DNA of 64,000 nt from Macrostomum hystrix (Eukaryota; Animalia; Platyhelminthes): contig CATNEN010000012.1 in the NCBI GenBank assembly GCA_950097015.1, positions 434,001-498,000 of the forward strand. The letters run 5' to 3'. Every line of letters begins with the position of its first letter. Within the stretch, counting starts at the first letter, position 1. A program made the position numbers and the translations under genes. Under the pieces are notes generated by a model. The model saw only the letters and a list, made by a program, of their open reading frames with translations, was not told the origin of the DNA and did no database searches. Positions 10,276 to 63,700 of the stretch are shown one piece after another.

Positions 10276-11059
10276 TGCGCTGCTTATATGCTATTTTAAA
10301 CTCATTTTCGCTTGTCTATAGAATGACTGACATAGACAGTTTGTGATAAATTTCGAATACAATTCGTAAAATGTCTCTTGTAGTTAGCCTACGCGTGTTA
10401 AAACGAGGTTGAAACTAACGGCAGCCCGCCCTCTGCTGTTGTCTGTGGACTGTGGTCGAATTCCATAGAAATGCACAGCGGGCGGGCCGTGAAACGCGTT
10501 GAGGCGTGTAGCCTATCAATATTGGTACATTTTAGTTGTTAGCCCCAAATAAACTTTGCTGAAGACAATCTGTTACTTTTGATGGCATAATAAAATTTAA
10601 TTGAATTGACATAACTGCTTTTTGCTAGACAATCCTAAGATGCCCTGCCTGATAGAGGGCTGAGAAATTACTAATTTACTGTTTAATTTGATTCAAACAT
10701 GCGTAACGAAGCAAAAACTAATCTCAGTGCGTCAGTCACAGACTCACAGCAGACCGTAGCTGGCATAATGCAGGCAATTTTGTCACTGTCAAATCTGTAT
10801 TAGGAACATTGCTGGACAATAGATTAGTCTAAGATGAAACTAACACTTACACAAATACCCATGCAGAGCTGCATGACAGCCTGGCACTGAGTGTCTTAAA
10901 AACGATAGGAGACCAAAATGAAAGTTAGCGAGAAATTGCAATAGATGAGAATTAGGAATATATGCGGAGACTATGGGCAGAGAGGGAGAGAAGACAAGGA
11001 TAATTGTATTAGAAATTGGGACATGAAGAGGACAATGCGGAGAATCGGATAAAAACGGG

Positions 11060-14000
11060 ACGAATTGACTAGGAAAGTGAAAGAATTGACTAAGAAACTG
11101 GGAGAATTGACTAGGAAACTGGGAGAATAGACTAAGAAACTGGGAGAATTGACTAGGAAACTGGGAGAATTGACTAGGAAGGTGGGAGAATTGACTTGGA
11201 AACTGGGAGAATTGACTTGGAAACTGGGAGAATTGGATTGGAAACTGGGAGAATTGGATAGGAAACTGGGAGAATTGACTAGGAAACTGGGAGAATTGAC
11301 TAGGAAACTGGGAGAATTGACTAGGAAACTGGGAGAATAGACTAAGAAACTGGGAGAATTGACTAGGAAACTGGGAGAATAGACTAAGAAACTGGGAGAA
11401 TTGACTAGGAAACTGGGAGAATTGACTAGGAAGGTGGGAGAATTGACTTGGAAACTGGGAGAATTGACTTGGAAACTGGGAGAATTGGATTGGAAACTGG
11501 GAGAATTGGATAGGAAACTGGGAGAATTGACTAGGAAACTGGGAGAATTGACTAGGAAACTGGGAGAATTGACTAGGAAACTGGGAGAATAGACTAAGAA
11601 ACTGGGAGAATTGACTAGGAAACTGGGAGAATAGACTAAGAAACTGGGAGAATTGACTAGGAAACTGGGAGAATTGACTAGGAAGGTGGGAGAATTGACT
11701 TGGAAACTGGGAGAATTGACTTGGAAACTGGGAGAATTGGATTGGAAACTGGGAGAATTGGATAGGAAACTGGGAGAATTGACTAGGAAACTGGGAGAAT
11801 TGACTAGGAAACTGGGAGAATTGACTAGGAAACTGGGAGAATAGACTAAGAAACTGGGAGAATTGACTAGGAAACTGGGAGAATTGACTAGGAAACTGGG
11901 AGAATAGACTAAGAAACTGGGAGAATTGACTAGGAAACTGGGAGAATTGACTAGGAAATTGGGAGAATTGACTAGGAAGGTGGGAGAATTGACTTGGAAA
12001 CTGGGAGAATTGACTAGGAAACTGGGAGAATAGACTAAGAAACTGGGAGAATTGACTAGGAAACTGGGAGAATTGACTAGGAAGGTGGGAGAATTGACTT
12101 GGAAACTGGGAGAATTGACTTGGAAACTGGGAGAATTGGATTGGAAACTGGGAGAATTGGATAGGAAACTGGGAGAATTGACTAGGAAACTGGGAGAATT
12201 GACTAGGAAACTGGGAGAATTGACTAGGAAACTGGGAGAATAGACTAAGAAACTGGGAGAATTGACTAGGAAACTGGGAGAATAGACTAAGAAACTGGGA
12301 GAATTGACTAGGAAACTGGGAGAATTGACTAGGAAGGTGGGAGAATTGACTTGGAAACTGGGAGAATTGACTTGGAAACTGGGAGAATTGGATTGGAAAC
12401 TGGGAGAATTGGATAGGAAACTGGGAGAATTGACTAGGAAAACTGGGAGAATTGACTAGGAAACTGGGAGAATTGACTAGGAAACTGGGAGAATAGACTA
12501 AGAAACTGGGAGAATTGACTAGGAAACTGGGAGAATAGACTAAGAAACTGGGAGAATTGACTAGGAAACTGGAGAATTGACTAGGAAGGTGGGAGAATTG
12601 ACTTGGAAACTGGGAGAATTGACTTGGAAACTGGGAGAATTGGATTGGAAACTGGGAGAATTGGATAGGAAACTGGGAGAATTGACTAGGAAACTGGGAG
12701 AATTGACTAGGAAACTGGGAGAATTGACTAGGAAACTGGGAGAATAGACTAAGAAACTGGGAGAATTGACTAGGAAACTGGGAGAATAGACTAAGAAACT
12801 GGGAGAATTGACTAGGAAACTGGGAGAATTGACTAGGAAGGTGGGAGAATTGACTTGGAAACTGGGAGAATTGACTTGGAAACTGGGAGAATTGGATTGG
12901 AAACTGGGAGAATTGGATAGGAAACTGGGAGAATTGACTAGGAAACTGGGAGAATTGACTAGGAAACTGGGAGAATTGACTAGGAAACTGGGAGAATAGA
13001 CTAAGAAACTGGGAGAATTGACTAGGAAACTGGGAGAATTGACTAGGAAACTGGGAGAATAGACTAAGAAACTGGGAGAATTGACTAGGAAACTGGGAGA
13101 ATTGACTAGGAAATTGGGAGAATTGACTAGGAAGGTGGGAGAATTGACTTGGAAACTGGGAGAATTGACTAGGAAACTGGGAGAATAGACTAAGAAACTG
13201 GGAGAATTGACTAGGAAACTGGGAGAATTGACTAGGAAGGTGGGAGAATTGACTTGGAAACTGGGAGAATTGACTTGGAAACTGGGAGAATTGGATTGGA
13301 AACTGGGAGAATTGGATAGGAAACTGGGAGAATTGACTAGGAAACTGGGAGAATTGACTAGGAAACTGGGAGAATTGACTAGGAAACTGGGAGAATAGAC
13401 TAAGAAACTGGGAGAATTGACTAGGAAACTGGGAGAATAGACTAAGAAACTGGGAGAATTGACTAGGAAACTGGGAGAATTGACTAGGAAGGTGGGAGAA
13501 TTGACTTGGAAACTGGGAGAATTGACTTGGAAACTGGGAGAATTGACTAGGAAACTGGGAGAATTGACTAGGAAACTGGGAGAATTGGATAGGAAACTGG
13601 GAGAATTGACTAGGAAACTGGGAGAATTGACTAGGAAACTGGGAGAATAGACTAAGAAACTGGGAGAATTGACTAGGAAACTGGGAGAAGTGACTAGGAA
13701 ATTGGGAGAATTGACTAGGAAGGTGGGAGAATTGACTTGGAAACTGGGAGAATTGACTTGGAAACGGGGAGAATTAGATTGGAAACTGGGAGAATTTACT
13801 TAGAAACTGGGAGAATTGGATAGGAAACTGGGAGAATTGACTAGGAAGCTGGGAGAATTGGATAGGAAACTGGGAGAATTGGATAGGAAACTGGGAGAAT
13901 TGACTAGGAAGCTGGGAGAATTGGATAGGAAACTGGGAGAATTGGATAGGAAACTGGGAGAATTGACTAGGAAGCTGGGAGAATTGACTAGGAAGCTGGG

Positions 14001-15375
14001 AAAATTGACTAGGAAGCTGGGAGAATTGGATAGGAAACTGGGAGAATTGGATAGGAAACTGGGAGAATTGACTAGGAAACTGGGAGAATAGACTAAGAAA
14101 CTGGGAGAAGTGACTAGGAAATTGGGAGAATTGACTAGGAAGGTGGGAGAATTGACTTGGAGACTGGGATAATTGACTTGGAAACGGGGAGAATTAGATT
14201 GGAAACTGGGAGAATTTACTTAGAAACTGGGAGAATTGGATAGGAAACTGGGAGAATTGACTAGGAAACTGGGAGAATTGGCTAGGAAACTGGGAGAATT
14301 GACTAGGAAACGGGGAGAATTGGATAGGAAACTGGGAGAATTGACTAGGAAGCTGGGAGAATTGACTAGGAAGCTGGGAAAATTGACTAGGAAGCTGGGA
14401 GAATTGGATAGGAAACTGGGAGAATTGGATAGGAAACTGGGAGAATTGGATAGGAAACTGGGAGAATTGACTAGGAAGCTGGGAGAAGTGACTAGGAAAT
14501 TGGGAGAATTGACTAGGAAGGTGGGAGAATTGACTTGGAAACTGGGAGAATTGACTTGGAAACGGGGAGAATTGGATTGGAAACTGGGAGAATTGGATAG
14601 GAAACTGGGAGAATTGGATAGGAAACTGAGAGAATTGACTAGAAAACTGGGAGAATTGACTAGGAAGCTGGGAGAATTGGATAGGAAACTGGGAGAATTG
14701 GATAGGAAACTGGGAGAATTGACTAGGAAACTGGGAGAATTGACTAGGAAACTGGGAGAATAGACTAAGAAACTGGGAGAATTGACTAGGAAACTGGGAG
14801 AAGTGACTAGGAAATTGGGAGAATTGACTAGGAAGGTGGGAGAATTGACTTGGAGACTGGGAGAATCGACTTGGAAACGGGGAGAATTAGATTGGAAACT
14901 GGGAGAATTTACTTAGAAACTGGGAGAATTGGATAGGAAACTGGGAGAATTGACTAGGAAACTGGGAGAATTGGATAGGAAACTGGGAGAATTGACTAGG
15001 AAACGGGGAGAATTGGATAGGAAACTGGGAGAATTGACTAGGAAGCTGGGAGAATTGACTAGGAAGTTGGGAAAATTGACTAGGAAGCTGGGAGAATTGG
15101 ATAGGAAACTGGGAGAATTGGATAGGAAACTGGGAGAATTGACTAGGAAGCTGGGAGAATTGACTAGGAAGCTGGGAAAATTGACTAGGAAGCTGGGAGA
15201 ATTGGATAGGAAACTGGGAGAATTGGATAGGAAACTGGGAGAATTGACTAGGAAGCTGGGAGAATTGGATAGGAAACTGGGAGAATTGGATAGGAAACTG
15301 GGAGAATTGACTAGGAAGCTGGGAGAATTGGATAGGAAACTGGGAGAATTGGATAGGAAACGGGGAGAATTGAAG
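11060..15375. repeat. 21-bp satellite (GGGAGAATTGACTAGGAAACT), about 200 copies, with higher-order structure
   Basis: Direct inspection; identical blocks recur at 252-bp and 399-bp spacing. Confidence 0.97.
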
Positions 15376-23670: not shown

Positions 23671-26600
23671 ATGGAATCGTTAGAAGCGACGGTGGCCGAA
23701 ACGGAAATCAAGAACAACACCAACAGTCGGGCTAGAGTCTCAGGCTGCTCAACTCGGGTTGTTGCAATCGCTGTGGACGGCGGCGAACATTCCAAAAGGG
23801 CATTCGACTACTACATGAGGCGCCTGCATCGGCGGACCGATCACGTGACTTTTCTGCACGTGGAAGCGCCGCCGCCAACTGGTCTGTGGACCGACCCCAG
23901 TCAGGTTTGTCCGGGAGTCCCTCGCTAGGGTATCTTTATCGACATCGGGCACTTCTCCAGTTGCTTTCTGCAGTTCACACCCCCTCCTTCTGCAGTTCAC
24001 ACCCCCTCCTTCTGCAAATCACACCCCCTCCTTCTGCAGTTCACACCCCTCCTTCTGCAAATCACACCCCCTCCTTCTGCAGTTCACACCCCCTCCTTCT
24101 GCAAATCACACCCCCTCCTTCTGCAGTTCACACCCCTCCTTCTGCAGTTCACACCCCCTCCTTCTGCAGTTCACACCCCTCCTTCTGCAGTTCACACCCC
24201 TCCTTCTGCAGTTCACACACCATCCTTCTGCAGTTCACACCCCCTCCTTCTGCAGTTCACACACCATCCTTCTGCAGTCCACACACCATCCTTCTGCAGT
24301 TCACACCCCCTCCTTCTGCAGTTCACACACCATCCTTCTGTAGTTCACACACCATCCTTCTGCAGTCCACACACCATCCTTCTGCAGTCCACACACCATC
24401 CTTCTGCAGTCCACACACCATCCTTCTGCAGTTCACACACCATCCTTCTGCAGTTCACACACCATCCTTCTGCAGTTCACACACCATCCTTCTGCAGTTC
24501 ACACACCATCCTTCTGTAGTTCACACACCATCCTTCTGCAGTTCACACACCATCCTTCTGCAGTTCACACACCATCCTTCTGCAGTTCACACACCATCCT
24601 TCTGCAGTTCACACACCATCCTTCTGCAGTTCACACACCATCCTTCTGTAGTTCACACCCCTCCTTCTGCAGTCCACACACCATCCTTCTGCAGTCCACA
24701 CACCATCCTTCTGTAGTTCACACCATCCTTCTGCAGTCCACACTCCCTCCTTCTGCAGTTCACACACCATCCTTCTGCAGTTCACACACCATCCTTCTGC
24801 AGTTCACACACCATCCTTCTGCAGTTCACACACCATCCTTCTGCAGTTCACACACCATCCTTCTGCAGTTCACACACCATCCTTCTGCAGTTCACACACC
24901 ATCCTTCTGCAAATCACACCCCCTCCTTCTGCAGTTCACACCCCTCCTTCTGCAGTTCACACTCCCTCCTTCTGCAGTTCACACACCATCCTTCTGCAGT
25001 TCACACACCATCCTTCTGCAGTTCACACACCATCCTTCTGCAGTTCACACACCATCCTTCTGCAGTCCACACCCCCTCCTTCTGCAGTTCACACACCATC
25101 CTTCTGCAGTTCCACACACCATCCTTCTGCAGTTCACACACCCTCCTTCTGCAGTTCACACACCATCCTTCTGTAGTTCACACACCATCCTTCTGCAGTC
25201 CACACACCATCCTTCTGCAGTCCACACACCATCCTTCTGCAGTCCACACACCATCCTTCTGCATTCCACACACCATCCTTCTGCAGTTCACACACCATCC
25301 TTCTGCAGTTCACACACCATCCTTCTGCAGTTCACACCCCCTCCTTCTGCAGTCCACACACCTTTCCTTCTGCAGTTCACACACCATCCTTCTGCAGTCC
25401 ACACCCCCTCCTTCTGCAGTTCACACACCATCCTTCTGCAGTTCACACACCATCCTTCTGCAGTTCACACCCCCTCCTTCTGCAGTTCACACACCATCCT
25501 TCTGCAGTTCACACACCATCCTTCTGCAGTTCCACACACCATCCTTCTGCAGTCCACACACCATCCTTCTGCAGTTCCACACACCATCCTTCTGCATTCC
25601 ACACACCATCCTTCTGCAGTTCACACACCATCCTTCTGCAGTTCACACACCATCCTTCTGCAGTTCACACACCATCCTTCTGCAGTTCACACCCCATCCT
25701 TCTGCAGTTCACACACCATCCTTCTGCAGTTCACACCCCCTCCTTCTGCAGTTCACACACCATCCTTCTGTAGTTCACACACCATCCTTCTGCAGTCCAC
25801 ACACCATCCTTCTGCAGTTCACACCCCCTCCTTCTGCAGTTCACACACCATCCTTCTGTAGTCCACACACCATCCTTCTGCAGTCCACACACCATCCTTC
25901 TGTAGTTCACACCCCTCCTTCTGCAGTCCACACACCATCCTTCTGCAGTCCACACACCATCCTTCTGTAGTTCACACCCATCCTTCTGCAGTCCACACCT
26001 CCCTCCTTCTGCAGTTCACACACCATCCTTCTGCAGTTCACACACCATCCTTCTGCAGTTCACACACCATCCTTCTGCAGTTCACACACCATCCTTCTGC
26101 AGTCCACACCCCCTCCTTCTGCAGTTCACACACCATCCTTCTGCAGTTCACACCCCCTCCTTCTGCAGTCCACACACCATCCTTCTGCAGTCCACACACC
26201 ATCCTTCTGCAGTCCACACACCATCCTTCTGTAGTTCACACCCCTCCTTCTGCAGTCCACACACCATCCTTCTGCAGTCCACACACCATCCTTCTGTAGT
26301 TCACACCATCCTTCTGCAGTCCACACTCCCTCCTTCTGCAGTTCACACACCATCCTTCTGCAGTTCACACACCATCCTTCTGCAGTTCACACACCATCCT
26401 TCTGCAGTTCACACACCATCCTTCTGCAGTCCACACCCCCTCCTTCTGCAGTTCACACACCATCCTTCTGCAGTCCACACACCATCCTTCTGCAGTTCAC
26501 ACCCCCTCCTTCTGCAGTCCACACACCATCCTTCTGTAGTTCACACACCATCCTTCTGTAGTTCACACCCCTCCTTCTGCAGTCCACACACCATCCTTCT

Positions 26601-27572
26601 GCAGTCCACACACCATCCTTCTGTAGTTCACACCATCCTTCAGCAGTCCACACTCCCTCCTTCTGCAGTTCACACACCATCCTTCTGCAGTTCACACACT
26701 ATCCTTCTGCAGTTCACACACCATCCTTCTGCAGTTCACACACCATCCTTCTGCAGTCCACACCCCCTCCTTCTGCAGTTCACACACCATCCTTCTGCAG
26801 TTCACACACCATCCTTCTGCAGTTCACACCCCCTCCTTCTGCAGTCCACACACCTTTCCTTCTGCAGTCCACACACCATCCTTCTGCAGTCCACACACCA
26901 TCCTTCTGCAGTTCACACACCATCCTTCTGCAGTTCACACACCATCCTTCTGCAGTCCACACACCATCCTTCTGCAGTTCACACCCCCTCCTTCTGCAGT
27001 TCACACCCCATCCTTCTGCAGTCCACACCCCCTCCTTCTGCAGTTCACACCCCTCCTTCTGCAGTTCACACCCCCTCCTTCTGCAGTTCACACCCCTCCT
27101 TCTGCAGTTCACACCCCCTCCTTCTGCAGTTCACACCCCCTCCTTCTGCAGTTCACACCCCCTCCTTCTGCAGTTCACACCCCCTCCTTCTGTAGTTCAC
27201 ACCCCCTCCTTCTGTAGTTCACACCCCATCCTTCTGCAGTTCACACCCCATCCTTCTGCAGTTCACACCCGCCTCATCCCGCAGATGTGGCACTCGGTGG
27301 TGTCGGCGGCCCGTCAGCTGGAGCGCCGAGTCACAGCCGATTGGTGCCTGCCGTACAACCTGACCGACGCTCGCTGGCTGTGCGAGTTCTGCGGTGGCCC
27401 TGGCCCGGCCATTGTGAAGCTGGCTGAGGATCGCGGCGCCGACCTGCTGGTGATCGGTAGCCGCGGCCTCGGCACTTTGAGACGCACGGTGCTGGGCAGT
27501 GTGTCAGCCTACGTGGTGCATCACAGCAGCGTGCCCGTGGTTGTCGTGCCAAGCACCGTTCCGTGCTACTGA
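23671..27572 (+). CDS. Universal stress protein (UspA domain); exons 23671-23904 and 27285-27572, 173 aa
   Basis: [19 protein letters not shown]...VTFLHV and [47 protein letters not shown] (G-2x-G-9x-GS motif); phase-0 intron CAG|GTTTGT ... CCGCAG|ATG. Confidence 0.93.
23968..27270. repeat. 20-22-bp minisatellite CTTCTGCAGTTCACACACCATC filling USP intron
   Basis: Roughly 150 copies (array length / unit length). Confidence 0.97.
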
Positions 27573-28019
27573 CGGCAGTAGTGTGCATGGCGCATTTCTA
27601 TTGAAAACTTTGTAATTTTATAACGACACTTTTGGAGGCAGCTTCGACGTTTTTGAGATCGATATATAAAAAAAATATTTCACTCTGTGCTGCCATTTTT
27701 AATACGAGCCTCGTAAAGACTTGCACCAAATATAAATAAAAAAAATTGCATACGTTTCCATTGTTTTCTATATGCAATCCAAAAAATTTTGTTGGAACGA
27801 TTTCGACTTTTTTAATTTTTTGCTAGTTCGAAGTTGTGCTCTTTGTTTCATTGATGCATGTGTTCAGATTTCGAAATGAGAAACTTGGAACCAGCAGTTC
27901 TGCATTAAATAAATAACATGGAAACCCAGAACTTTCATTCCTGGAACAAAACAAGGAACCCTTAATCCTAGAATCACAGAAAAAAACACGCTGAATCCCT
28001 GATCCAAGAATCCCAGAAT

Positions 28020-29371: not shown

Positions 29372-29424
29372 AAGGGCTCGACCAATCGGGCCTCGCGGGA
29401 CAGGCTGAGCAGGCTGTCATAAAT
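29372..29424 (+). promoter_or_regulatory. Putative core promoter of neuropeptide gene
   Basis: CCAAT at 29372 and TATA-like CATAAAT at 29418, about 100-150 bp upstream of ATG 29522. Confidence 0.4.
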
Positions 29425-29521
29425 ACTGATTAAGACCGCCACTTCAACTTGGCTGCCGATCTGAGTAAAGAAACTCCTGTAGCTTCGATTGCTCGCCCAG
29501 GCTGGCTATACGTTGGGCAAA

Positions 29522-30211
29522 ATGACAAGTCAATTTTTGCTTCTCCTGACTGCCACCATCGGCATTTTGGCGTCCATAGCAATCTGCGCTCCAGCTGATT
29601 TGGACGAAGCCAATCACACCACTGAGAACATGCTGGTGAGCTTGGAGGATAGTCTTGAAAAGAGGTTTAACGGTGGCATGTTCGGCAAGCGGTTCAACGG
29701 CGGCATGTTCGGCAAGCGGTTCAACGGTGGCATGTTCGGCAAGCGGTTCAACGGTGGCATGTTCGGCAAGCGGTTCAACGGTGGCATGTTCGGCAAGCGG
29801 TTCAACGGTGGCATGTTCGGCAAGCGGTTCAACGGCGGCATGTTCGGCAAGCGGTTCAACGGTGGCATGTTCGGCAAGCGGTTCAACGGTGGCATGTTCG
29901 GCAAACGGTTCAACGGCGGCATGTTCGGCAAGCGGTTCAACGGCGGCATGTTCGGCAAGCGGTTCAACGGCGGCATGTTCGGCAAGCGGTTCAACGGTGG
30001 CATGTTCGGCAAGCGGTTCAACGGTGGCATGTTCGGCAAGCGGTTCAACGGTGGCATGTTCGGCAAGCGGTTCAACGGTGGCATGTTCGGCAAGCGGTTC
30101 AACGGTGGCATGTTCGGCAAGCGATTCAACGGCGGCATGTTCGGCAAGAGGTTTGACGATATGACAGCCAATACTATCAGCTACAGCACACAAAATCCTT
30201 CTCAGGTGTGA
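29522..30211 (+). CDS. Neuropeptide precursor with 18 copies of FNGGMF-amide, 229 aa
   Basis: Signal peptide MTSQFLLLLTATIGILASIAICA, acidic spacer, then KR-(FNGGMFG-KR)x18 (dibasic cleavage plus Gly amide donor); differences among the 27-bp units are synonymous. Confidence 0.93.
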   Translation: MTSQFLLLLTATIGILASIAICAPADLDEANHTTENMLVSLEDSLEKRFNGGMFGKRFNGGMFGKRFNGGMFGKRFNGGMFGKRFNGGMFGKRFNGGMFGKRFNGGMFGKRFNGGMFGKRFNGGMFGKRFNGGMFGKRFNGGMFGKRFNGGMFGKRFNGGMFGKRFNGGMFGKRFNGGMFGKRFNGGMFGKRFNGGMFGKRFNGGMFGKRFDDMTANTISYSTQNPSQV

Positions 30212-30611
30212 GGCCATCAGTCGAGGTATCAGAGACAATACAGGTTGATGTTGGACTCAGTTCTGGACCTTATCAACCTACTCAGCTGTACTAATCCTGA
30301 GGACTGTGTTCTAAGCCATTGTCGCATCAGTTATCCAAGCCCCTCCTTGGCGGAACATAATTTGTTCCTATTTGTAAGAACCTGTGGGCGCCTAAATATA
30401 CAATCCAGATGCATCGCACTTTGCTGGGCGGATGTCTCGAAATGCACTTAAATATAGCAGGAATATGTCAAAACAGATGCGATGCGCATGCGTCTCGATA
30501 CTGATTGCTCTTTGTGTTAAAAATATCGCCGATCGTCTGCGAGCGTACTACGATCGTACCAGTCTAGGAAATCCCATGGGAATAGAAGGCCTATTGGAAT
30601 ATTTTTCAGTT

Positions 30612-30869: not shown

Positions 30870-32845
30870 GTTTTAGCTTCAGTTTCTGCTGTGATTCAAG
30901 CCACTAGTTCTGCTGTGATTCAAGCCATTAGTTCTGCTGTGATTCAAGCCACTAGTTCTGCTGTGATTCAAGCCACTAGTTCTGCTGTGATTCGAGCCAT
31001 TAGTTCTGCTGTGATTCAAGTCATTAGTTCTGCTGTGATTCAAGTCATTAGTTCTGCTGTGATTCAAGCCATTAGTTCTGCTGTGATTCAAGCCACTAGT
31101 TCTGCTGTGATTCAAGCCACTAGTTCTGCTGTGATTCAAGCCATTAGTTCTGCTGTGATTCAAGCCATTAGTTCTGCTGTGATTCGAGCCATTAGTTCTG
31201 CTGTGATTCAAGTCATTAGTTCTGCTGTGATTCAAGTCATTAGTTCTGCTGTGATTCAAGCCACTAGTTCTGCTGTGATTCAAGCCATTAGTTCTGCTGT
31301 GATTCAAGCCATTAGTTCTGCTATGATTCAAGCCATTAGTTCTGCTGTGATTCAAGCCACTAGTTCTGCTGTGATTCAAGCCATTAGTTCTGCTGTGATT
31401 CAAGCCATTAGTTCTGCTGTGATTCAAGCCACTAGTTCTGCTGTGATTCAAGCCACTAGTTCTGCTGTGATTCAAGCCATTAGTTCTGCTGTGATTCAAG
31501 CCATTAGTTCTGCTGTGATTCAAGCCATTAGTTCTGCTGTGATTCAAGCCACTAGTTCTGCTGTGATTCAAGCCATTAGTTCTGCTGTGATTCAAGCCAT
31601 TAGTTCTGCTATGATTCAAGCCATTAGTTCTGCTGTGATTCAAGCCATTAGTTCTGCTGTGATTCAAGCCATTAGTTCTGCTGTGATTCAAGCCATTAGT
31701 TCTGCTGTGATTCAAGCCATTAGTTCTGCTGTGATTCAAGCCACTAGTTCTGCTGTGATTCAAGCCATTAGTTCTGCTGTGATTCAAGCCATTAGTTCTG
31801 CTATGATTCAAGCCATTAGTTCTGCTGTGATTCAAGCCACTAGTTCTGCTGTGATTCAAGCCACTAGTTCTGCTGTGATTCAAGCCATTAGTTCTGCTGT
31901 GATTCAAGCCACTAGTTCTGCTGTGATTCAAGCCACTAGTTCTGCTGTGATTCAAGCCATTAGTTCTGCTGTGATTCAAGCCATTAGTTCTGCTTTGATT
32001 CAAGCCATTAGTTCTGCTGTGATTCAAGCCACTAGTTCTGCTGTGATTCAAGCCATTAGTTCTGCTGTGGTTTAAGTCATTAGTTCTGCTGTGGTTTAAG
32101 TCATTAGTTCTGCTGTGATTCAAGCCATTAGTTCTGCTGTGATTCAAGTCATTAGTTCTGCTGTGATTCAAGTCATTAGTTCTGCTGTGATTCAAGCCAC
32201 TAGTTCTGCTGTGATTCAAGCCATTAGTTCTGCTGTGATTCAAGCCATTAGTTCTGCTATGATTCAAGCCATTAGTTCTGCTGTGATTCAAGCCACTAGT
32301 TCTGCTGTGATTCAAGCCACTAGTTCTGCTGTGATTCAAGCCATTAGTTCTGCTGTGATTCAAGCCATTAGTTCTGCTGTGATTCAAGCCATTAGTTCTG
32401 CTGTGATTCAAGCCATTAGTTCTGCTGTGATTCAAGCCATTAGTTCTGCTGTGATTCAAGCCATTAGTTCTGCTGTGATTCAAGCCACTAGTTCTGCTGT
32501 GATTCAAGCCATTAGTTCTGCTGTGATTCAAGCCATTAGTTCTGCTGTGATTCAAGCCATTAGTTCTGCTGTGATTCAAGCCATTAGTTCTGCTGTGATT
32601 CAAGCCATTAGTTCTGCTGTGATTCAAGCCATTAGTTCTGCTGTGATTCAAGCCACTAGTTCTGCTGTGATTCAAGCCATTAGTTCTGCTGTGATTCAAG
32701 CCATTAGTTCTGCTGTGATTCAAGCCATTAGTTCTGCTGTGATTCAAGTCATTAGTTCTGCTGTGATTCGAGTCATTAGTTCTGCTGTGATTCAAGCCAC
32801 TAGTTCTGCTGTGATTCAAGTCGTTAGTTCTGCTGTGATTACTGC
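30870..32845. repeat. 24-bp minisatellite GTTCTGCTGTGATTCAAGCCATTA
   Basis: About 82 copies, beginning just after the SINE. Confidence 0.97.
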
Positions 32846-60890: not shown

Positions 60891-61439
60891 GATAAATGAA
60901 CTATTTATTAAGCATGACCCCGACCAGCAAGCAAAAAAAGCAAACAATCAAGCAGATTTGCCAGCAAAGGACGGGGCCCTGGATCCAATGTATCAGAACC
61001 AGCTGTAGTTGTCAAGGGCACAACCCCAGATAATGTTGCTAATCGGTTTGCTAAAACTATTGCAATGCAGATAAACCCAAGCGCTTCTCCAGCTCATTGC
61101 TTCTGGTTTCCCATGTTTCTCTTTACTCCGATAAGCTTTCAGGCCTTTTAAAAATAGTCAAGTCATTGCGTTGGGTTCAGCTGGTCTGAGGACCGATGCG
61201 AATTCGCTGTTTAGCCGCCGAGTTAAACAAAATTCACCGCAGAATGAAACTTTAGGAGTGGCACATGCGCGCAGCTCCGAAATCTGCATTGATAACAGAG
61301 CCCTTGAATTATTGAGCACATGAGTGCTTCACTGCACTCATTATCTATTTAATTAGAAAGTCAAATGCTCATAACTCGAGTTGAAATGTAACTCCCGTTA
61401 ATGCATTTCTGCATGTAACTATAGAATATTAATAAAGTA

Positions 61440-63700
61440 AAGGATTCAGGGGAAGAAAGGAAGGGATATAGTGAAGGATCAGGGGTAGAAAGGAAATGAT
61501 ATAGTGAAGGATCAGGGGTAGAAAGGAAAGGATATAGTGAAGGATCAGGGGTACAAAGGAAGGGATATAGTGAAGGATCAGGGGTAGAAAGGAAAGGATA
61601 TAGTAAAGGATCAGGGGTAAAAAGGAAAGGATGTAGTGAAGGATCAGGGGTAGAAAGGAAGGGATATAGTGAAGGATCAGGGGTAGAAAGGAAAGGATGT
61701 AGTGAAGGATCAGGGGTAGAAAGGAAGGGATATAGTGAAGGATCAGGGGTAGAAAGGAAAGGATATAGTGAAGGATCAGGGGTAGAAAGGAAGGGATGTA
61801 GTAAAGGATCAGGGGTAGAAAGGAAATGATATAGTGAAGGATCAGGGGTAGAAAGGAAAGGATGTAGTGAAGGATCAGGGGTAGAAAGGAAAGGATGTAG
61901 TGAAGGATCAGGGGTAGAAAGGAAAGGATGTAGTGAAGGATCAGGGGTAGAAAGGAAAGGATGTAGTGAAGGATCAGGGGTAGAAAGGAAGGGATATAGT
62001 GAAGGATCAGGGGTACAAAGGAAGGGATATAGTGAAGGATCAGGGGTAGAAAGGAAAGGATATAGTAAAGGATCAGGGGTAAAAAGGAAAGGATGTAGTG
62101 AAGGATCAGGGGTACAAAGGAAGGGATATAGTGAAGGATCAGGGGTAGAAAGGAAAGGATATAGTGAAGGATCAGGGGTAGAAAGGAAGGGATGTAGTAA
62201 AGGATCAGGGGTAAAAAGGAAAGGATATAGTGAAGGATCAGGGGTAGAAAGGAAAGGATATAGTGAAGGATCAGGGGTAGAAAGGAAGGGATGTAGTGAA
62301 GGATCAGGGGTAGAAAGGAAAGGATATAGTGAAGGATCAGGGGTAGAAAGGAAGGGATGTAGTGAAGGATCAGGGGTAGAAAGGAAGGGATGTAGTGAAG
62401 GATCAGGGGTAGAAAGGAAAGGATATAGTGAAGGATCAGGGGTAGAAAGGAAGGGATGTAGTGAAGGATCAGGGGTAGAAAGGAATGGATGTAGTGAAGG
62501 ATCAGGGGTAGAAAGGAAAGGATGTAGTGAAGGATCAGGGGTAGAAAGGAAGGCATGTAGTGAAGGATCAGGGGTAGAAAGAAAAGAATGTAGTAAAGGA
62601 TCAGGGGTAGAAAGGAAAGGATATAGTGAATGATCAGGGGTAGAAAGGAAAGGATGTAGTGAAGGATCAGGGGTAGAAAGGAAGGGGTGTACTGAAGGAT
62701 CAGGGGTAGAAAGGAAAGGATGTTGTAAAGTATCTGGGGTAGAAAGGAAAGGATATAGTGAAGGATCAGGGGTAGAAAGGAAAGGATGTAGTGAAGAATC
62801 TGGGGTAGAAAGGAAAGGATATAGTGAAGGATCAGGGGGAGAAAGGAAGGGATGTAGTGAAGGATCAGGGGTAGAAAGGAAGGGATGTAGTGAAGGATCA
62901 GGGGTAGAAAGGAAGAGATGTAGTGAAGGATCAGGGGTAGAAAGGAAGGGATGTAGTGAAGGATCAGGGGTAGAAAGGAAGGGATGTAGTGAAGGATCAG
63001 GGGTAGAAAGGAAGGGATGTAGTGAAGGATCAGGGGTAGAAAGGAAGGGATGTAGTGAAGGATCAGGGGTAGAAAGAAAAGGATGTAGTGAAGGATCAGG
63101 GGTAGAAAGGAAGGGATGTAGTGAAGGATCAGGGGTAGAAAGGAAAGGATATAGTGAAGGATCAGGGGTAGAAAGGAAAGGATATAGTGAAGGATCAGGG
63201 GGAGAAAGGAAAGGATATAGTGAAGGATCAGGGGTAGAAAGGAAAGGATATAGTGAAGGATCAGGGGTAGAAAGGAAAGGATGTAGTGAAGGATCAGGGG
63301 TAGAAAGGAAAGGATATAGTGAAGGATCAGGGGTAGAAAGGAAGGGATGTAGTGAAGGATCAGGGGTAGAAAGGAAGGGATGTAGTGAAGGATCAGGGGT
63401 AGAAAGGAAAGGATGTAGTGAAGGATCAGGGGTAGAAAGGAAAGGATATAGTGAAGGATCAGGGGTAGAAAGGAAGGGATGTAGTGAAGGATCAGGGGTA
63501 GAAAGGAAGGGATGTAGTGAAGGATCAGGGGTAGAAAGGAAGGGATGTAGTAAAGGATCAGGGGTAGAAAGGAAGGGATGTAGTGAAGGATCAGGGGTAG
63601 AAAGGAAGGGATGTAGTAAAGCATCAGGGGTAGAAAGGGATGTAGTGAAGGATCAGGCCTAGAAAGTAAGGGATTCAGTGGAATCGAGAATTCATCAGTG
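61440..63700. repeat. 33-bp minisatellite GTGAAGGATCAGGGGTAGAAAGGAAAGGATATA
   Basis: About 68 copies; accounts for the 763-aa minus-strand ORF. Confidence 0.96.

What the first reader, a model, noticed from the sequence alone, without database searches (positions are those of the whole stretch)
29522..30211. FNGGMFamide neuropeptide precursor with 18 identical copies
Seen: signal peptide plus 18 x FNGGMF-G-KR. Unlike the neighbouring satellites, all differences among units are synonymous (GGT/GGC, AAG/AAA, CGG/CGA/AGG, TTT/TTC), which marks this repeat as coding. From recall, the peptide resembles the C-terminus of C. elegans NLP-10 (AIPFNGGMYamide, GGxYamide group). Inference: a possibly undescribed lophotrochozoan counterpart of that family; copy number may vary like a VNTR and tune peptide dose.
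Basis: partly seen in the sequence, partly recalled or inferred. Interest (0 to 1): 0.75.

Follow-up and report, generated by a model that had tools for sequence, protein, structure and literature searches.

The report
Flatworm 18-copy FNGGMF-amide neuropeptide gene
This is very probably a real single-exon gene of a Macrostomum flatworm whose secreted product is cut into 18 copies of a six-residue amidated signalling peptide that looks like insect SIFamide and nematode NLP-10; it is a new member of a known kind.

Summary
Window 29522-30211 (+) is a 229-codon ORF: hydrophobic signal peptide, spacer ending EKR, 18 identical FNGGMF-G-KR units (29666-30151) and a 19-residue tail. All five variable DNA columns are synonymous.

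The genome is a Macrostomum-type flatworm. The M. lignano orthologue (GenBank "hypothetical protein" BOX15_Mlig004279g2) shares synteny, a CCAAT/TATA promoter block, the signal peptide, the peptide and the tail. Flank dS is about 1.7, yet the unit stays 9/9 identical. The M. lignano loci hold 28 and 31 units; the annotated 5 is a false-intron artefact.

This genome has two paralogues, 14 x FNGGMF and about 29 x QYNGGMF. This scan already reported both on other DNA (s1-395450, s1-358479).

The peptide matches Drosophila SIFamide (...PPFNGSIF-amide) at 4 of 6 residues. It is identical to the C-terminal hexapeptide of a Diploscapter nematode precursor. Published work classes NLP-10 as the SIFamide-type ligand of NPR-35.

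Two NPFF-receptor-like GPCR genes exist in this genome, but receptor orthology stayed unresolved. I found no transcript for this gene itself, and no held paper prints the peptide. Within-species copy-number variation and dose tuning are untested.

Verdict: real gene, new member of a known kind, moderate interest.

The parts
29376..29404 (+). Conserved upstream block containing a CCAAT box (29382-29386), about 140-146 nt before the ATG
   Evidence: It is the only non-coding stretch upstream that BLASTN aligns with both M. lignano loci, and it sits at the same distance from the ATG.
29418..29425 (+). TATA-like element CATAAATA, about 100 nt before the ATG. The inferred transcription start is about 30 nt downstream.
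   Evidence: M. lignano has TATAAATA about 10 nt nearer its ATG, after the shared CCAAT block. Its function as a promoter is inferred, not shown.
29522..30211 (+). Complete single-exon coding sequence, 229 codons plus stop
   Evidence: The start, the frame and the position of the stop after ...TQNP(S/T)Q-x are conserved in the M. lignano orthologue.
29522..29596 (+). Signal peptide. Hydrophobic core is residues 5-16; likely cleavage is after residue 22 (AIC|A) up to residue 25.
   Evidence: Mean Kyte-Doolittle value is 2.57 over 12 residues, and small residues sit at -3/-1. The same layout is seen in the orthologue and both paralogues. No dedicated signal-peptide predictor was available.
29597..29665 (+). 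Acidic spacer propeptide ending in the dibasic site E-K-R
   Evidence: It has diverged from M. lignano (N-terminal region overall: 18 of 45 aligned residues identical, dN about 0.53, dS about 1.7).
29666..30151 (+). Eighteen tandem 27-nt units, each encoding FNGGMF + Gly (amide donor) + Lys-Arg (convertase site)
   Evidence: Only this frame gives one single unit type. The singleton variants lie in units 1, 9, 17 and 18.
30152..30208 (+). C-terminal tail peptide of 19 residues with the conserved motif TQNP(S/T)Q
   Evidence: Alignment with the M. lignano orthologue.
27282..27573 (+). Context only: last conserved exon of the upstream universal-stress-protein (Usp) gene, used as a synteny anchor
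   Evidence: 85% nucleotide identity to the Usp gene (PF00582) that lies 1.5 kb upstream of the M. lignano orthologue on the same strand.

Best explanation
Window 29522-30211 is an intact, intronless gene of a Macrostomum-type flatworm for a secreted prohormone.

Inferred route: the signal peptide takes the protein into the secretory pathway. A PC2-type convertase cuts after each Lys-Arg, a carboxypeptidase trims the basic residues, and peptidylglycine alpha-amidating monooxygenase converts the exposed Gly into a C-terminal amide. This releases 18 copies of FNGGMF-NH2 per precursor (calculated [M+H]+ 671.297), plus an acidic spacer and a C-terminal tail peptide.

The gene is one of three paralogues in this genome, all making xNGGMF-amides. 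The peptide most likely acts as a neuropeptide on a rhodopsin-type GPCR. The best candidate family is the NPFF/SIFamide receptor family, which would make this the flatworm counterpart of arthropod SIFamide and nematode NLP-10/SIFP-1.

Shown here: the sequence anatomy, purifying selection on the peptide, orthology and synteny with M. lignano, and the presence of processing-enzyme families and of NPFF-receptor-like genes.

Inferred: expression in neurons, the processing steps, the receptor pairing, and homology with SIFamide. I put real secreted amidated-peptide precursor at about 0.9 and SIFamide-type ligand at about 0.5.
For: Anatomy:
- Signal peptide, EKR, then 18 x FNGGMF-G-KR.
- All five variable columns are synonymous.

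Orthologue:
- P0005, M. lignano BOX15_Mlig004279g2, E 5e-36.
- It has the same upstream Usp gene.
- It shares the CCAAT block at -140 and a TATA-like box, and the tail motif.
- Flank dS is about 1.7 and dN about 0.53, while the 9-residue unit is identical and its DNA consensus differs at 1 of 27 nt.
- The M. lignano GenBank annotation is built purely from RNA-seq (PMC5730564), so that orthologue is transcribed.

Paralogues at G000 C2:8570273-8570671 and C34:4066259-4067170 keep NGGMFGKR with mostly synonymous change: 4 of 6 and 4 of 5 variable columns, each array holding one unit with a replaced residue (FNGGVF; YNGGLF).

Processing machinery: Cu2_monooxygen (PHM-type) and convertase P-domain genes are present. 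A PC2 homologue expressed in a pattern suggesting nervous-system specificity is published for M. lignano (PMC4490696).

SIFamide link:
- Drosophila SIFamide is AYRKPPFNGSIFa (PMC4022047).
- Diploscapter precursors carry ...PFNGGMF-GKR.
- NLP-10 = SIFP-1 is the ligand of NPR-35 = SIFR-1 (PMC11004728, PMC11532408).

Receptor candidates:
- G000 C38:8646828-8647568 plus 8650074-8650295, and the M. lignano protein P0156, which G000 C5:4726657-4732055 matches at 76-80%, have human NPFFR2 as their best solved relative. The C5 gene itself was not searched against solved structures. Scores are 120 vs 96 bits for the next family, and 161 vs 151.
- A SIFa/NPFF receptor is reported in a monogenean flatworm (PMC9645230).

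The nearest language-model neighbours are all multi-copy neuropeptide precursors, which is weak evidence.
Against: - No transcript or protein record for this gene or its paralogues was found in the collections (one search used a wrong start codon and is void). Expression in this species is therefore not shown here.
- No canonical AATAAA/ATTAAA lies on the + strand between the stop and 36514.
- The peptide lacks the proline-containing N-terminal extension of SIFamide and of the nematode peptides.
- It is present in 18 copies, against one copy in arthropods.
- Six residues can converge.
- The nematode hit is only E 5.5e-3.
- Reciprocal receptor evidence conflicts. An arthropod 'SIFamide receptor-like' protein (P0172) matches a different, QRFP-receptor-like four-gene group best, and a small tree left it unresolved.
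- Pfam has no family for the protein.
Confidence: 0.8

Rival explanations
1. It is a genuine neuropeptide precursor, but of a family confined to Macrostomum or macrostomorph flatworms. Its hexapeptide converged on the FNGxxF-amide ending and signals through a receptor unrelated to the NPFF/SIFamide family.
For: - Only Macrostomum proteins are true relatives in a full HMMER scan of 1.84 billion representatives.
- No similarity to SIFamide or nematode precursors exists outside the short peptide.
- The architecture differs: 18 copies and no Pro extension.
- Receptor orthology is unresolved.
Against: - The peptide is 6/6 identical to the C-terminal hexapeptide of a nematode precursor.
- Four residues are shared with arthropod SIFamide (F-N-G and the final F) and the I/M difference is conservative.
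- NPFF-receptor-like genes are present in this genome and in M. lignano.
Confidence: 0.35
2. It is a secreted amidated peptide made by non-neural gland cells, for example a prostate or seminal, adhesive, defensive or pheromone product, rather than a neuropeptide.
For: - No expression data were obtained here.
- Very high copy numbers and rapid copy-number change (14 to 31) are also typical of exocrine peptide genes.
- The spacer and signal regions evolve fast.
Against: - The strict conservation of a six-residue amidated peptide across species and three paralogues fits receptor-ligand constraint.
- The same hexapeptide ends a nematode precursor of NLP-10 type, and NLP-10 is a neuronal peptide in C. 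elegans (PMC11532408).
Confidence: 0.08
3. It is a non-coding 27-bp minisatellite that happens to be open in one frame.
For: - About a third of the window is tandem repeat.
- Four of six frames are open through the array.
- The array DNA is unusually similar between species.
Against: - There is an in-frame ATG with a signal peptide, and Gly-Lys-Arg in every unit.
- Variation is synonymous only, and only this frame is conserved across species and paralogues.
- The stop, tail and promoter block are conserved, and the locus is syntenic.
- The orthologue is an RNA-seq-derived gene model.
Confidence: 0.02

Closest known systems
Macrostomum lignano BOX15_Mlig004279g2 (P0005; GenBank/UniProt 'hypothetical/uncharacterized protein')
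   Same: Orthologue. It has the same upstream Usp neighbour, the same CCAAT block and a TATA-like box about 10 nt nearer its ATG, a signal peptide, the identical FNGGMFGKR unit and the tail motif TQNP(S/T)Q.
   Different: Its genomic arrays hold 28 and 31 units, against 18 here. The deposited 114-aa product shows only 5 units, because two or one 26-nt units (a G-run one base short) break the frame and a false intron skips about 700 bp. Signal and spacer are only about 40% identical.
Two paralogues in the same genome (G000 C2:8570273-8570671, 14 x FNGGMF/FNGGVF; C34:4066259-4067170, about 29 x QYNGGMF/QYNGGLF)
   Same: Same design: signal peptide, spacer, then tandem xNGGMF-G-KR units, in a single exon. 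Unit DNA consensus is nearly the same.
   Different: Signal peptides, spacers and tails are unrelated. The C34 peptide carries an N-terminal Gln (probably pyroglutamate) and Tyr in place of Phe. This scan already reported both (s1-395450, s1-358479).
Nematode NLP-10 / SIFP-1-type precursors (Diploscapter pachys PAV77688.1, PAV84654.1 = P0002, P0003)
   Same: Several copies of peptides ending in PFNGGMF-Gly-Lys-Arg, so the last six residues and the processing signals are identical. C. elegans NLP-10 is the ligand of the SIFamide/NPFF-type receptor NPR-35 (PMC11004728).
   Different: The nematode has four copies of 11-16-residue peptides with a Pro-containing extension, separated by spacers. The flatworm has 18 bare hexapeptides back to back. 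That the Diploscapter proteins are NLP-10 orthologues rests on my own knowledge of the C. elegans sequence, which the held papers did not let me verify.
Arthropod SIFamide (AYRKPPFNGSIF-amide)
   Same: C-terminal F-N-G-x-(I/M)-F-amide, with a Gly amide donor and a dibasic site (PMC4022047).
   Different: SIFamide is a single 12-residue peptide directly behind the signal peptide, with a conserved basic Pro-Pro N-terminal half. It has Ser-Ile where the flatworm has Gly-Met.
Spiralian SIFamide/FFamide precursors (annelid, nemertean, phoronid)
   Same: These are the expected orthologous family in the flatworm's own superphylum (PMC3890597; bioRxiv 10.1101/2021.03.03.433790).
   Different: Their sequences are not printed in the held main texts, so no comparison could be made. 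I found no flatworm member recorded in the papers I read, and no search could test that directly.

Membership tests
Multi-copy amidated neuropeptide prohormone (general class) | N-terminal signal peptide | tested here: met
   Hydrophobic core at residues 5-16 (mean KD 2.57) and small residues at -3/-1 around residues 20-25. The same holds in the orthologue and paralogues. This is a simple rule, not a trained predictor.
Multi-copy amidated neuropeptide prohormone (general class) | Peptide copies bounded by dibasic convertase sites, with a C-terminal Gly as amide donor | tested here: met
   EKR stands before the first unit, and G-K-R ends all 18 units.
Multi-copy amidated neuropeptide prohormone (general class) | Purifying selection on the mature peptide, with relaxed spacers | tested here: met
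   The unit is 9/9 identical between species and 8-9/9 among paralogues. N-terminal dN is about 0.53 and dS about 1.7.
Multi-copy amidated neuropeptide prohormone (general class) | Processing enzymes encoded in the genome (prohormone convertase, amidating monooxygenase) | tested here: met
   PF01483 P-domain and PF01082 Cu2_monooxygen matches exceed the cut-offs. This is family level only, since PF01082 also covers dopamine-beta-hydroxylase-type enzymes.
Multi-copy amidated neuropeptide prohormone (general class) | Transcription in neurons and detection of the mature peptide | not testable with these tools
   No transcript record was found for this species. There is only indirect evidence, from the RNA-seq-built M. 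lignano gene model.
SIFamide / NLP-10 (SIFP-1) / NPFF-type ligands | C-terminal F-N-G-(S/G)-(I/M)-(F/Y)-amide core | tested here: met
   4/6 identical plus I/M against Drosophila SIFamide, and 6/6 against the Diploscapter peptides.
SIFamide / NLP-10 (SIFP-1) / NPFF-type ligands | Proline-containing N-terminal extension before the core (KPPF... in arthropods, (I/L/M)PF... in nematodes) | tested here: not met
   Each flatworm peptide starts at Phe directly after Lys-Arg.
SIFamide / NLP-10 (SIFP-1) / NPFF-type ligands | Precursor layout: one copy right behind the signal peptide (arthropods) or four spaced copies (nematodes) | tested here: not met
   There are 18 contiguous copies after a spacer of about 23 residues.
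SIFamide / NLP-10 (SIFP-1) / NPFF-type ligands | An NPFF/SIFamide-family receptor present in the same genome | tested here: inconclusive
   Exon 1 of the C38 gene and M. lignano P0156 (which the C5 gene matches at 76-80%) have NPFFR2 as best solved relative. However, an arthropod SIFamide-receptor-like protein matches a QRFPR-like four-gene group better, and the tree is unresolved for lack of reference sequences.
SIFamide / NLP-10 (SIFP-1) / NPFF-type ligands | The peptide activates that receptor | not testable with these tools
   This needs a heterologous receptor assay.
Echinoderm SALMFamides | S-x-(L/F)-x-F-amide C-terminus | tested here: not met
   The last five residues are N-G-G-M-F, with no Ser at -5 and no Leu/Phe at -3.
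Allatostatin-A / buccalin | (Y/F)-x-F-G-(L/I)-amide, or ...GG(L/I)-amide, C-terminus | tested here: not met
   It ends in G-M-F-amide. There was no Pfam Allatostatin match, only a weak language-model neighbour.

The most novel reading that the evidence does not exclude
These three genes are the long-missing SIFamide-type ligands of Platyhelminthes. The flatworm keeps the ecdysozoan-like F-N-G-x-x-(F/Y)-amide core, implying this was the ancestral protostome SIFamide ending. It has turned a one-copy hormone gene into a three-gene family with 14 to 31 copies per precursor, whose array length changes quickly between species and homeologous copies. Ligand dose per transcript would then be an evolvable trait.
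Probability: 0.35. Interest if true: 0.55.

Novelty: new member of a known kind. Interest (0 to 1): 0.4.

Why it matters
In the papers I read, flatworm SIFa/NPFF-type signalling appears only as a receptor in a monogenean (PMC9645230), and I did not come across a flatworm ligand; no search tested that directly. A conserved hexapeptide with a simple predicted mass, in a transgenic-capable model genus, makes the pairing directly testable by receptor assay, RNAi and peptidomics.

It also gives a clean example of a coding minisatellite whose copy number shifts between close relatives. And it flags that the public M. lignano protein record is truncated by an annotation artefact.

It does not reveal a new kind of molecule.

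Tried and rejected
- **Pfam:** the scan of the protein found no family.
- **Full-text searches:** FNGGMF, NGGMF and GGMF gave no relevant paper. 'MFamide' with 'flatworm' gave only misspelt FMRFamide or SALMFamide hits.
- **McVeigh et al. 2009** (PMC2749192), the flatworm neuropeptide catalogue, is not held, so I could not check whether an M. lignano EST of this gene was listed there.
- **Exact-product look-ups** for this gene and both paralogues found nothing on record. One search used a wrong start codon and is void.
- **Big HMMER scan:** the top 150 were swamped by periodic or low-complexity proteins and unrelated multi-copy precursors. Only P0005 was a true relative. Weak true relatives such as the nematode proteins (34 bits) cannot be seen in that list.
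- **Poly(A) signal:** no AATAAA/ATTAAA lies downstream. The bacterial promoter/terminator scan is irrelevant for this eukaryotic gene.
- **C. elegans NLP-10 sequence:** it could not be verified in the held papers.
- **Receptor orthology:** the Pfam 7tm_1 sweep, PDB best-hit typing, a reverse search with a Thrips SIFamide-receptor-like protein and a quick ML tree did not resolve which Macrostomum receptor is the SIFa/NPFF orthologue. The first tree run did not finish its careful search. The two-exon C38 receptor was searched exon by exon, by reference only. Its exons were not joined, so no full-length model was searched.
- **Paralogue promoters:** they do not share the CCAAT/TATA spacing.
- **Splice donor at the stop:** a possible donor at CAG|GTGTGA was rejected, because the stop position is conserved and M. 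lignano has no GT there.

Full report
**Observation.** The stated coordinates are exact. The + strand has an ATG at 29522 and a stop at 30209-30211, giving 229 codons. The product has four parts:
- a hydrophobic N-terminus;
- an acidic spacer ending Glu-Lys-Arg;
- eighteen consecutive 27-nt units (29666-30151), each reading FNGGMF-G-K-R;
- a 19-residue tail.

Tandem Repeats Finder reports the same array (period 27, 18.3 copies). Five columns vary among the units and all five changes are synonymous. Only 21% of random single-base changes would be synonymous, so the naive chance is about 4e-4.

I add two cautions. Four of six frames are open through the array. The antisense frame that shares wobble positions is also nearly invariant within the array. 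The in-frame signal peptide, the Gly-Lys-Arg sites and the comparisons below do.

**Organism and orthologue.** The window is G000:C12:434001-498000 of a 220-Mb assembly. A word search with the first 84 residues found one protein, M. lignano BOX15_Mlig004279g2 (P0005; E 5e-36), annotated only as hypothetical.

Its two genomic loci (L012, L013, assembly GCA_002269645.1) carry a Usp gene 1.5 kb upstream on the same strand. The exons of that gene match window 23747-23906 and 27282-27573 at 81-85%. So the loci are syntenic and the genome is a Macrostomum-type flatworm other than M. lignano.

Upstream, a 29-nt block with a CCAAT box lies about 140 nt before the ATG in both species. It is followed by CATAAATA here and TATAAATA in M. 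lignano. The stop falls at the same place, after TQNP(S/T)Q-x.

In the N-terminal 45 aligned codons dS is about 1.7 and dN about 0.53. Yet the nine-residue unit is identical and its DNA consensus differs at one base. Across species and paralogues the antisense reading changes while the sense peptide does not.

This is strong evidence for a coding gene under purifying selection on the peptide.

**The public M. lignano record is truncated.** The M. lignano loci contain 31 and 28 unit starts. Two (L012) and one (L013) of these units are 26 nt long, with a G-run one base short. The deposited 114-residue product, with five units, spans a 965-1045-bp gene range. A false intron therefore bridges the frame breaks.

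The assembly is PacBio/Canu-based, and the annotation was built only from RNA-seq and a de novo transcriptome mapped back to the genome (PMC5730564). That fits collapsed repeats and homopolymer errors, although real frameshifts are not excluded.

The same paper makes the gene model indirect evidence that the orthologue is transcribed. For the window's own gene I found no transcript or protein record, so expression in this species is not shown here.

**Family within the genome.** A six-frame search of G000 found two paralogues:
- C2:8570273-8570671 (-): 207 aa, 13 x FNGGMF and 1 x FNGGVF.
- C34:4066259-4067170 (+): about 364 aa, 28 x QYNGGMF and 1 x QYNGGLF.

Both have their own signal peptides and G-K-R sites, and variation among units is again mostly synonymous. 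Other matches in that search are satellites with stops or without cleavage sites. This scan had already reported both paralogues on other DNA (s1-395450, s1-358479). The present gene is the third member.

**Relatives elsewhere.**
- Pfam has no family for the protein.
- The word search with the whole protein found a single cluster. It holds Diploscapter pachys PAV77688.1 and PAV84654.1, plus matching ENA contigs.
- These are 143-154-residue nematode precursors with four peptides ending ...NGGMF-G, three of them ...PFNGGMF-G(KR).
- A full HMMER scan of 1.84 billion representatives returned P0005 as the only true relative among the best 150. The rest were periodic proteins or unrelated multi-copy precursors.
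- Language-model neighbours are all neuropeptide precursors, at scores that count only as a lead.

**What it is like.** Published reviews class C. elegans NLP-10 as SIFP-1, the ligand of NPR-35/SIFR-1. NPR-35 belongs to the bilaterian NPFF/SIFamide receptor family (PMC11004728, PMC11538413, PMC11532408).

Drosophila SIFamide is AYRKPPFNGSIF-amide (PMC4022047). FNGGMF-amide shares F-N-G and the final Phe-amide with it and has Met for Ile. It is identical to the last six residues of the Diploscapter peptides.

The differences are clear:
- there is no Pro-containing extension;
- there are 18 back-to-back copies, rather than one (arthropods) or four (nematodes).

So it works like, and may be, a SIFamide-type ligand. 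Two features of that family were tested and not met, and a hexapeptide can converge. I therefore do not file it as a proven member.

**Receptor side.** G000 has more than 150 rhodopsin-type GPCR matches.

One two-exon gene has human NPFF receptors 2 and 1 as its best solved relatives. It lies at C38:8646828-8647568 plus 8650074-8650295. The score is 120 bits, against 96 for orexin receptors. Only exon 1 was searched, by reference, and the exons were not joined.

Its M. lignano orthologue (P0155) and a paralogue (P0156) exist. P0156 corresponds to G000 C5:4726657-4732055, and its best solved relative is again NPFFR2 (161 vs 151 bits).

Against this, a Thrips 'SIFamide receptor-like' protein (P0172) matches a different, intronless four-gene group better. 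The best solved relative of that group is the QRFP receptor. A quick tree with the few references available left P0172 unresolved.

The literature notes that NPFF/SIFamide and QRFP receptors have an affinity to each other (PMC6188537). It also reports that a monogenean flatworm has a SIFa/NPFF-clade receptor (PMC9645230).

In short, plausible receptors exist, but orthology and pairing remain open.

**Processing machinery.** Convertase P-domain and Cu2_monooxygen genes are present. A PC2 homologue whose expression pattern suggests nervous-system specificity is published for M. lignano (PMC4490696).

**Copy number.** There are 18 units here, 28 and 31 in the two M. lignano copies, and 14 and about 29 in the paralogues. 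Singleton variants lie in units 1, 9, 17 and 18, three of them at the array edges, as expected for unequal exchange with homogenisation. This supports rapid evolutionary change in array length. Polymorphism within the species and any dose effect were not testable.

**Verdict.** This is a real, single-exon prohormone gene for 18 copies of FNGGMF-amide. It is conserved in the genus, is one of three paralogues, and is probably a SIFamide/NLP-10-type signal. It is a new member of a known kind. It is of moderate interest, mainly because it makes the flatworm SIFamide question testable.

Noticed in passing
window 23747-27573 (+): The upstream universal-stress-protein (Usp) gene has two exons conserved with M. 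lignano (23747-23906 and 27282-27573). The intron between them is filled by a 3.3-kb array of a 22-bp satellite (23966-27268, about 150 copies). In M. lignano the matching stretches lie only about 480 bp apart.
   Followed up: partly
L012 4001-5045 and L013 4001-4965 (M. lignano NIVC01001722.1, NIVC01000162.1): The public M. lignano protein BOX15_Mlig004279g2 (114 aa, 5 units) under-reports arrays of 31 and 28 units. Units of 26 nt (TTCAACGGGGAATG..., one G short) break the frame, and the gene model skips about 700 bp as an intron.
   Followed up: yes
window 29666-30151 vs L012/L013 arrays: The array DNA is about 93% identical between the two species, and the unit consensus differs at 1 of 27 nt, although synonymous sites in the flanking coding sequence are saturated (dS about 1.7). 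Strong codon preference, an RNA-level constraint or the small number of sites could explain this. I did not resolve it.
   Followed up: partly
G000 C38:8646828-8650295 (+) and C5:4726657-4732055 (-): The C38 gene (exon 1) and the M. lignano protein P0156, which the C5 gene matches at 76-80%, have the human NPFF receptor 2 as closest solved relative; the C5 gene itself was not searched. M. lignano orthologues are P0155 and P0156. Unnamed relatives at 40-46% identity occur in ENA and Logan assemblies (P0157-P0169).
   Followed up: partly
G000 C37:2820380-2821828, C3:5239719-5240894, C34:5030503-5031735, C39:11103196-11104350: Four intronless paralogous GPCR genes. The one tested (C37, L042) has the QRFP receptor as closest solved relative, and all four are this genome's best matches to an arthropod SIFamide-receptor-like protein.
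   Followed up: partly
whole window: Roughly a third of the 64 kb is tandem satellite with 14-50-bp periods. Large arrays lie at 11053-15373, 23966-27268, 30884-32840 and 61436-63674, with about ten more of 0.5-1.6 kb. Most have strong strand skew in G/C. The neuropeptide array is the only one with a signal peptide and cleavage sites in frame.
   Followed up: no
L009-L011 (ENA assemblies ERZ23140454, ERZ23140456, ERZ23184192): Short contigs in three ENA assemblies encode a 154-aa protein that sits in the same 90%-identity cluster as the Diploscapter pachys precursors but is 11 residues longer at the N-terminus. So a Diploscapter-like nematode is present in those samples. In this nematode lineage the NLP-10-type peptides end in Phe, not Tyr.
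   Followed up: no
window 30209-30216: The stop codon sits inside CAG|GTGTGAGG, which resembles a 5' splice donor. M. lignano has no GT there and stops at the same position, so I read it as chance.
   Followed up: yes
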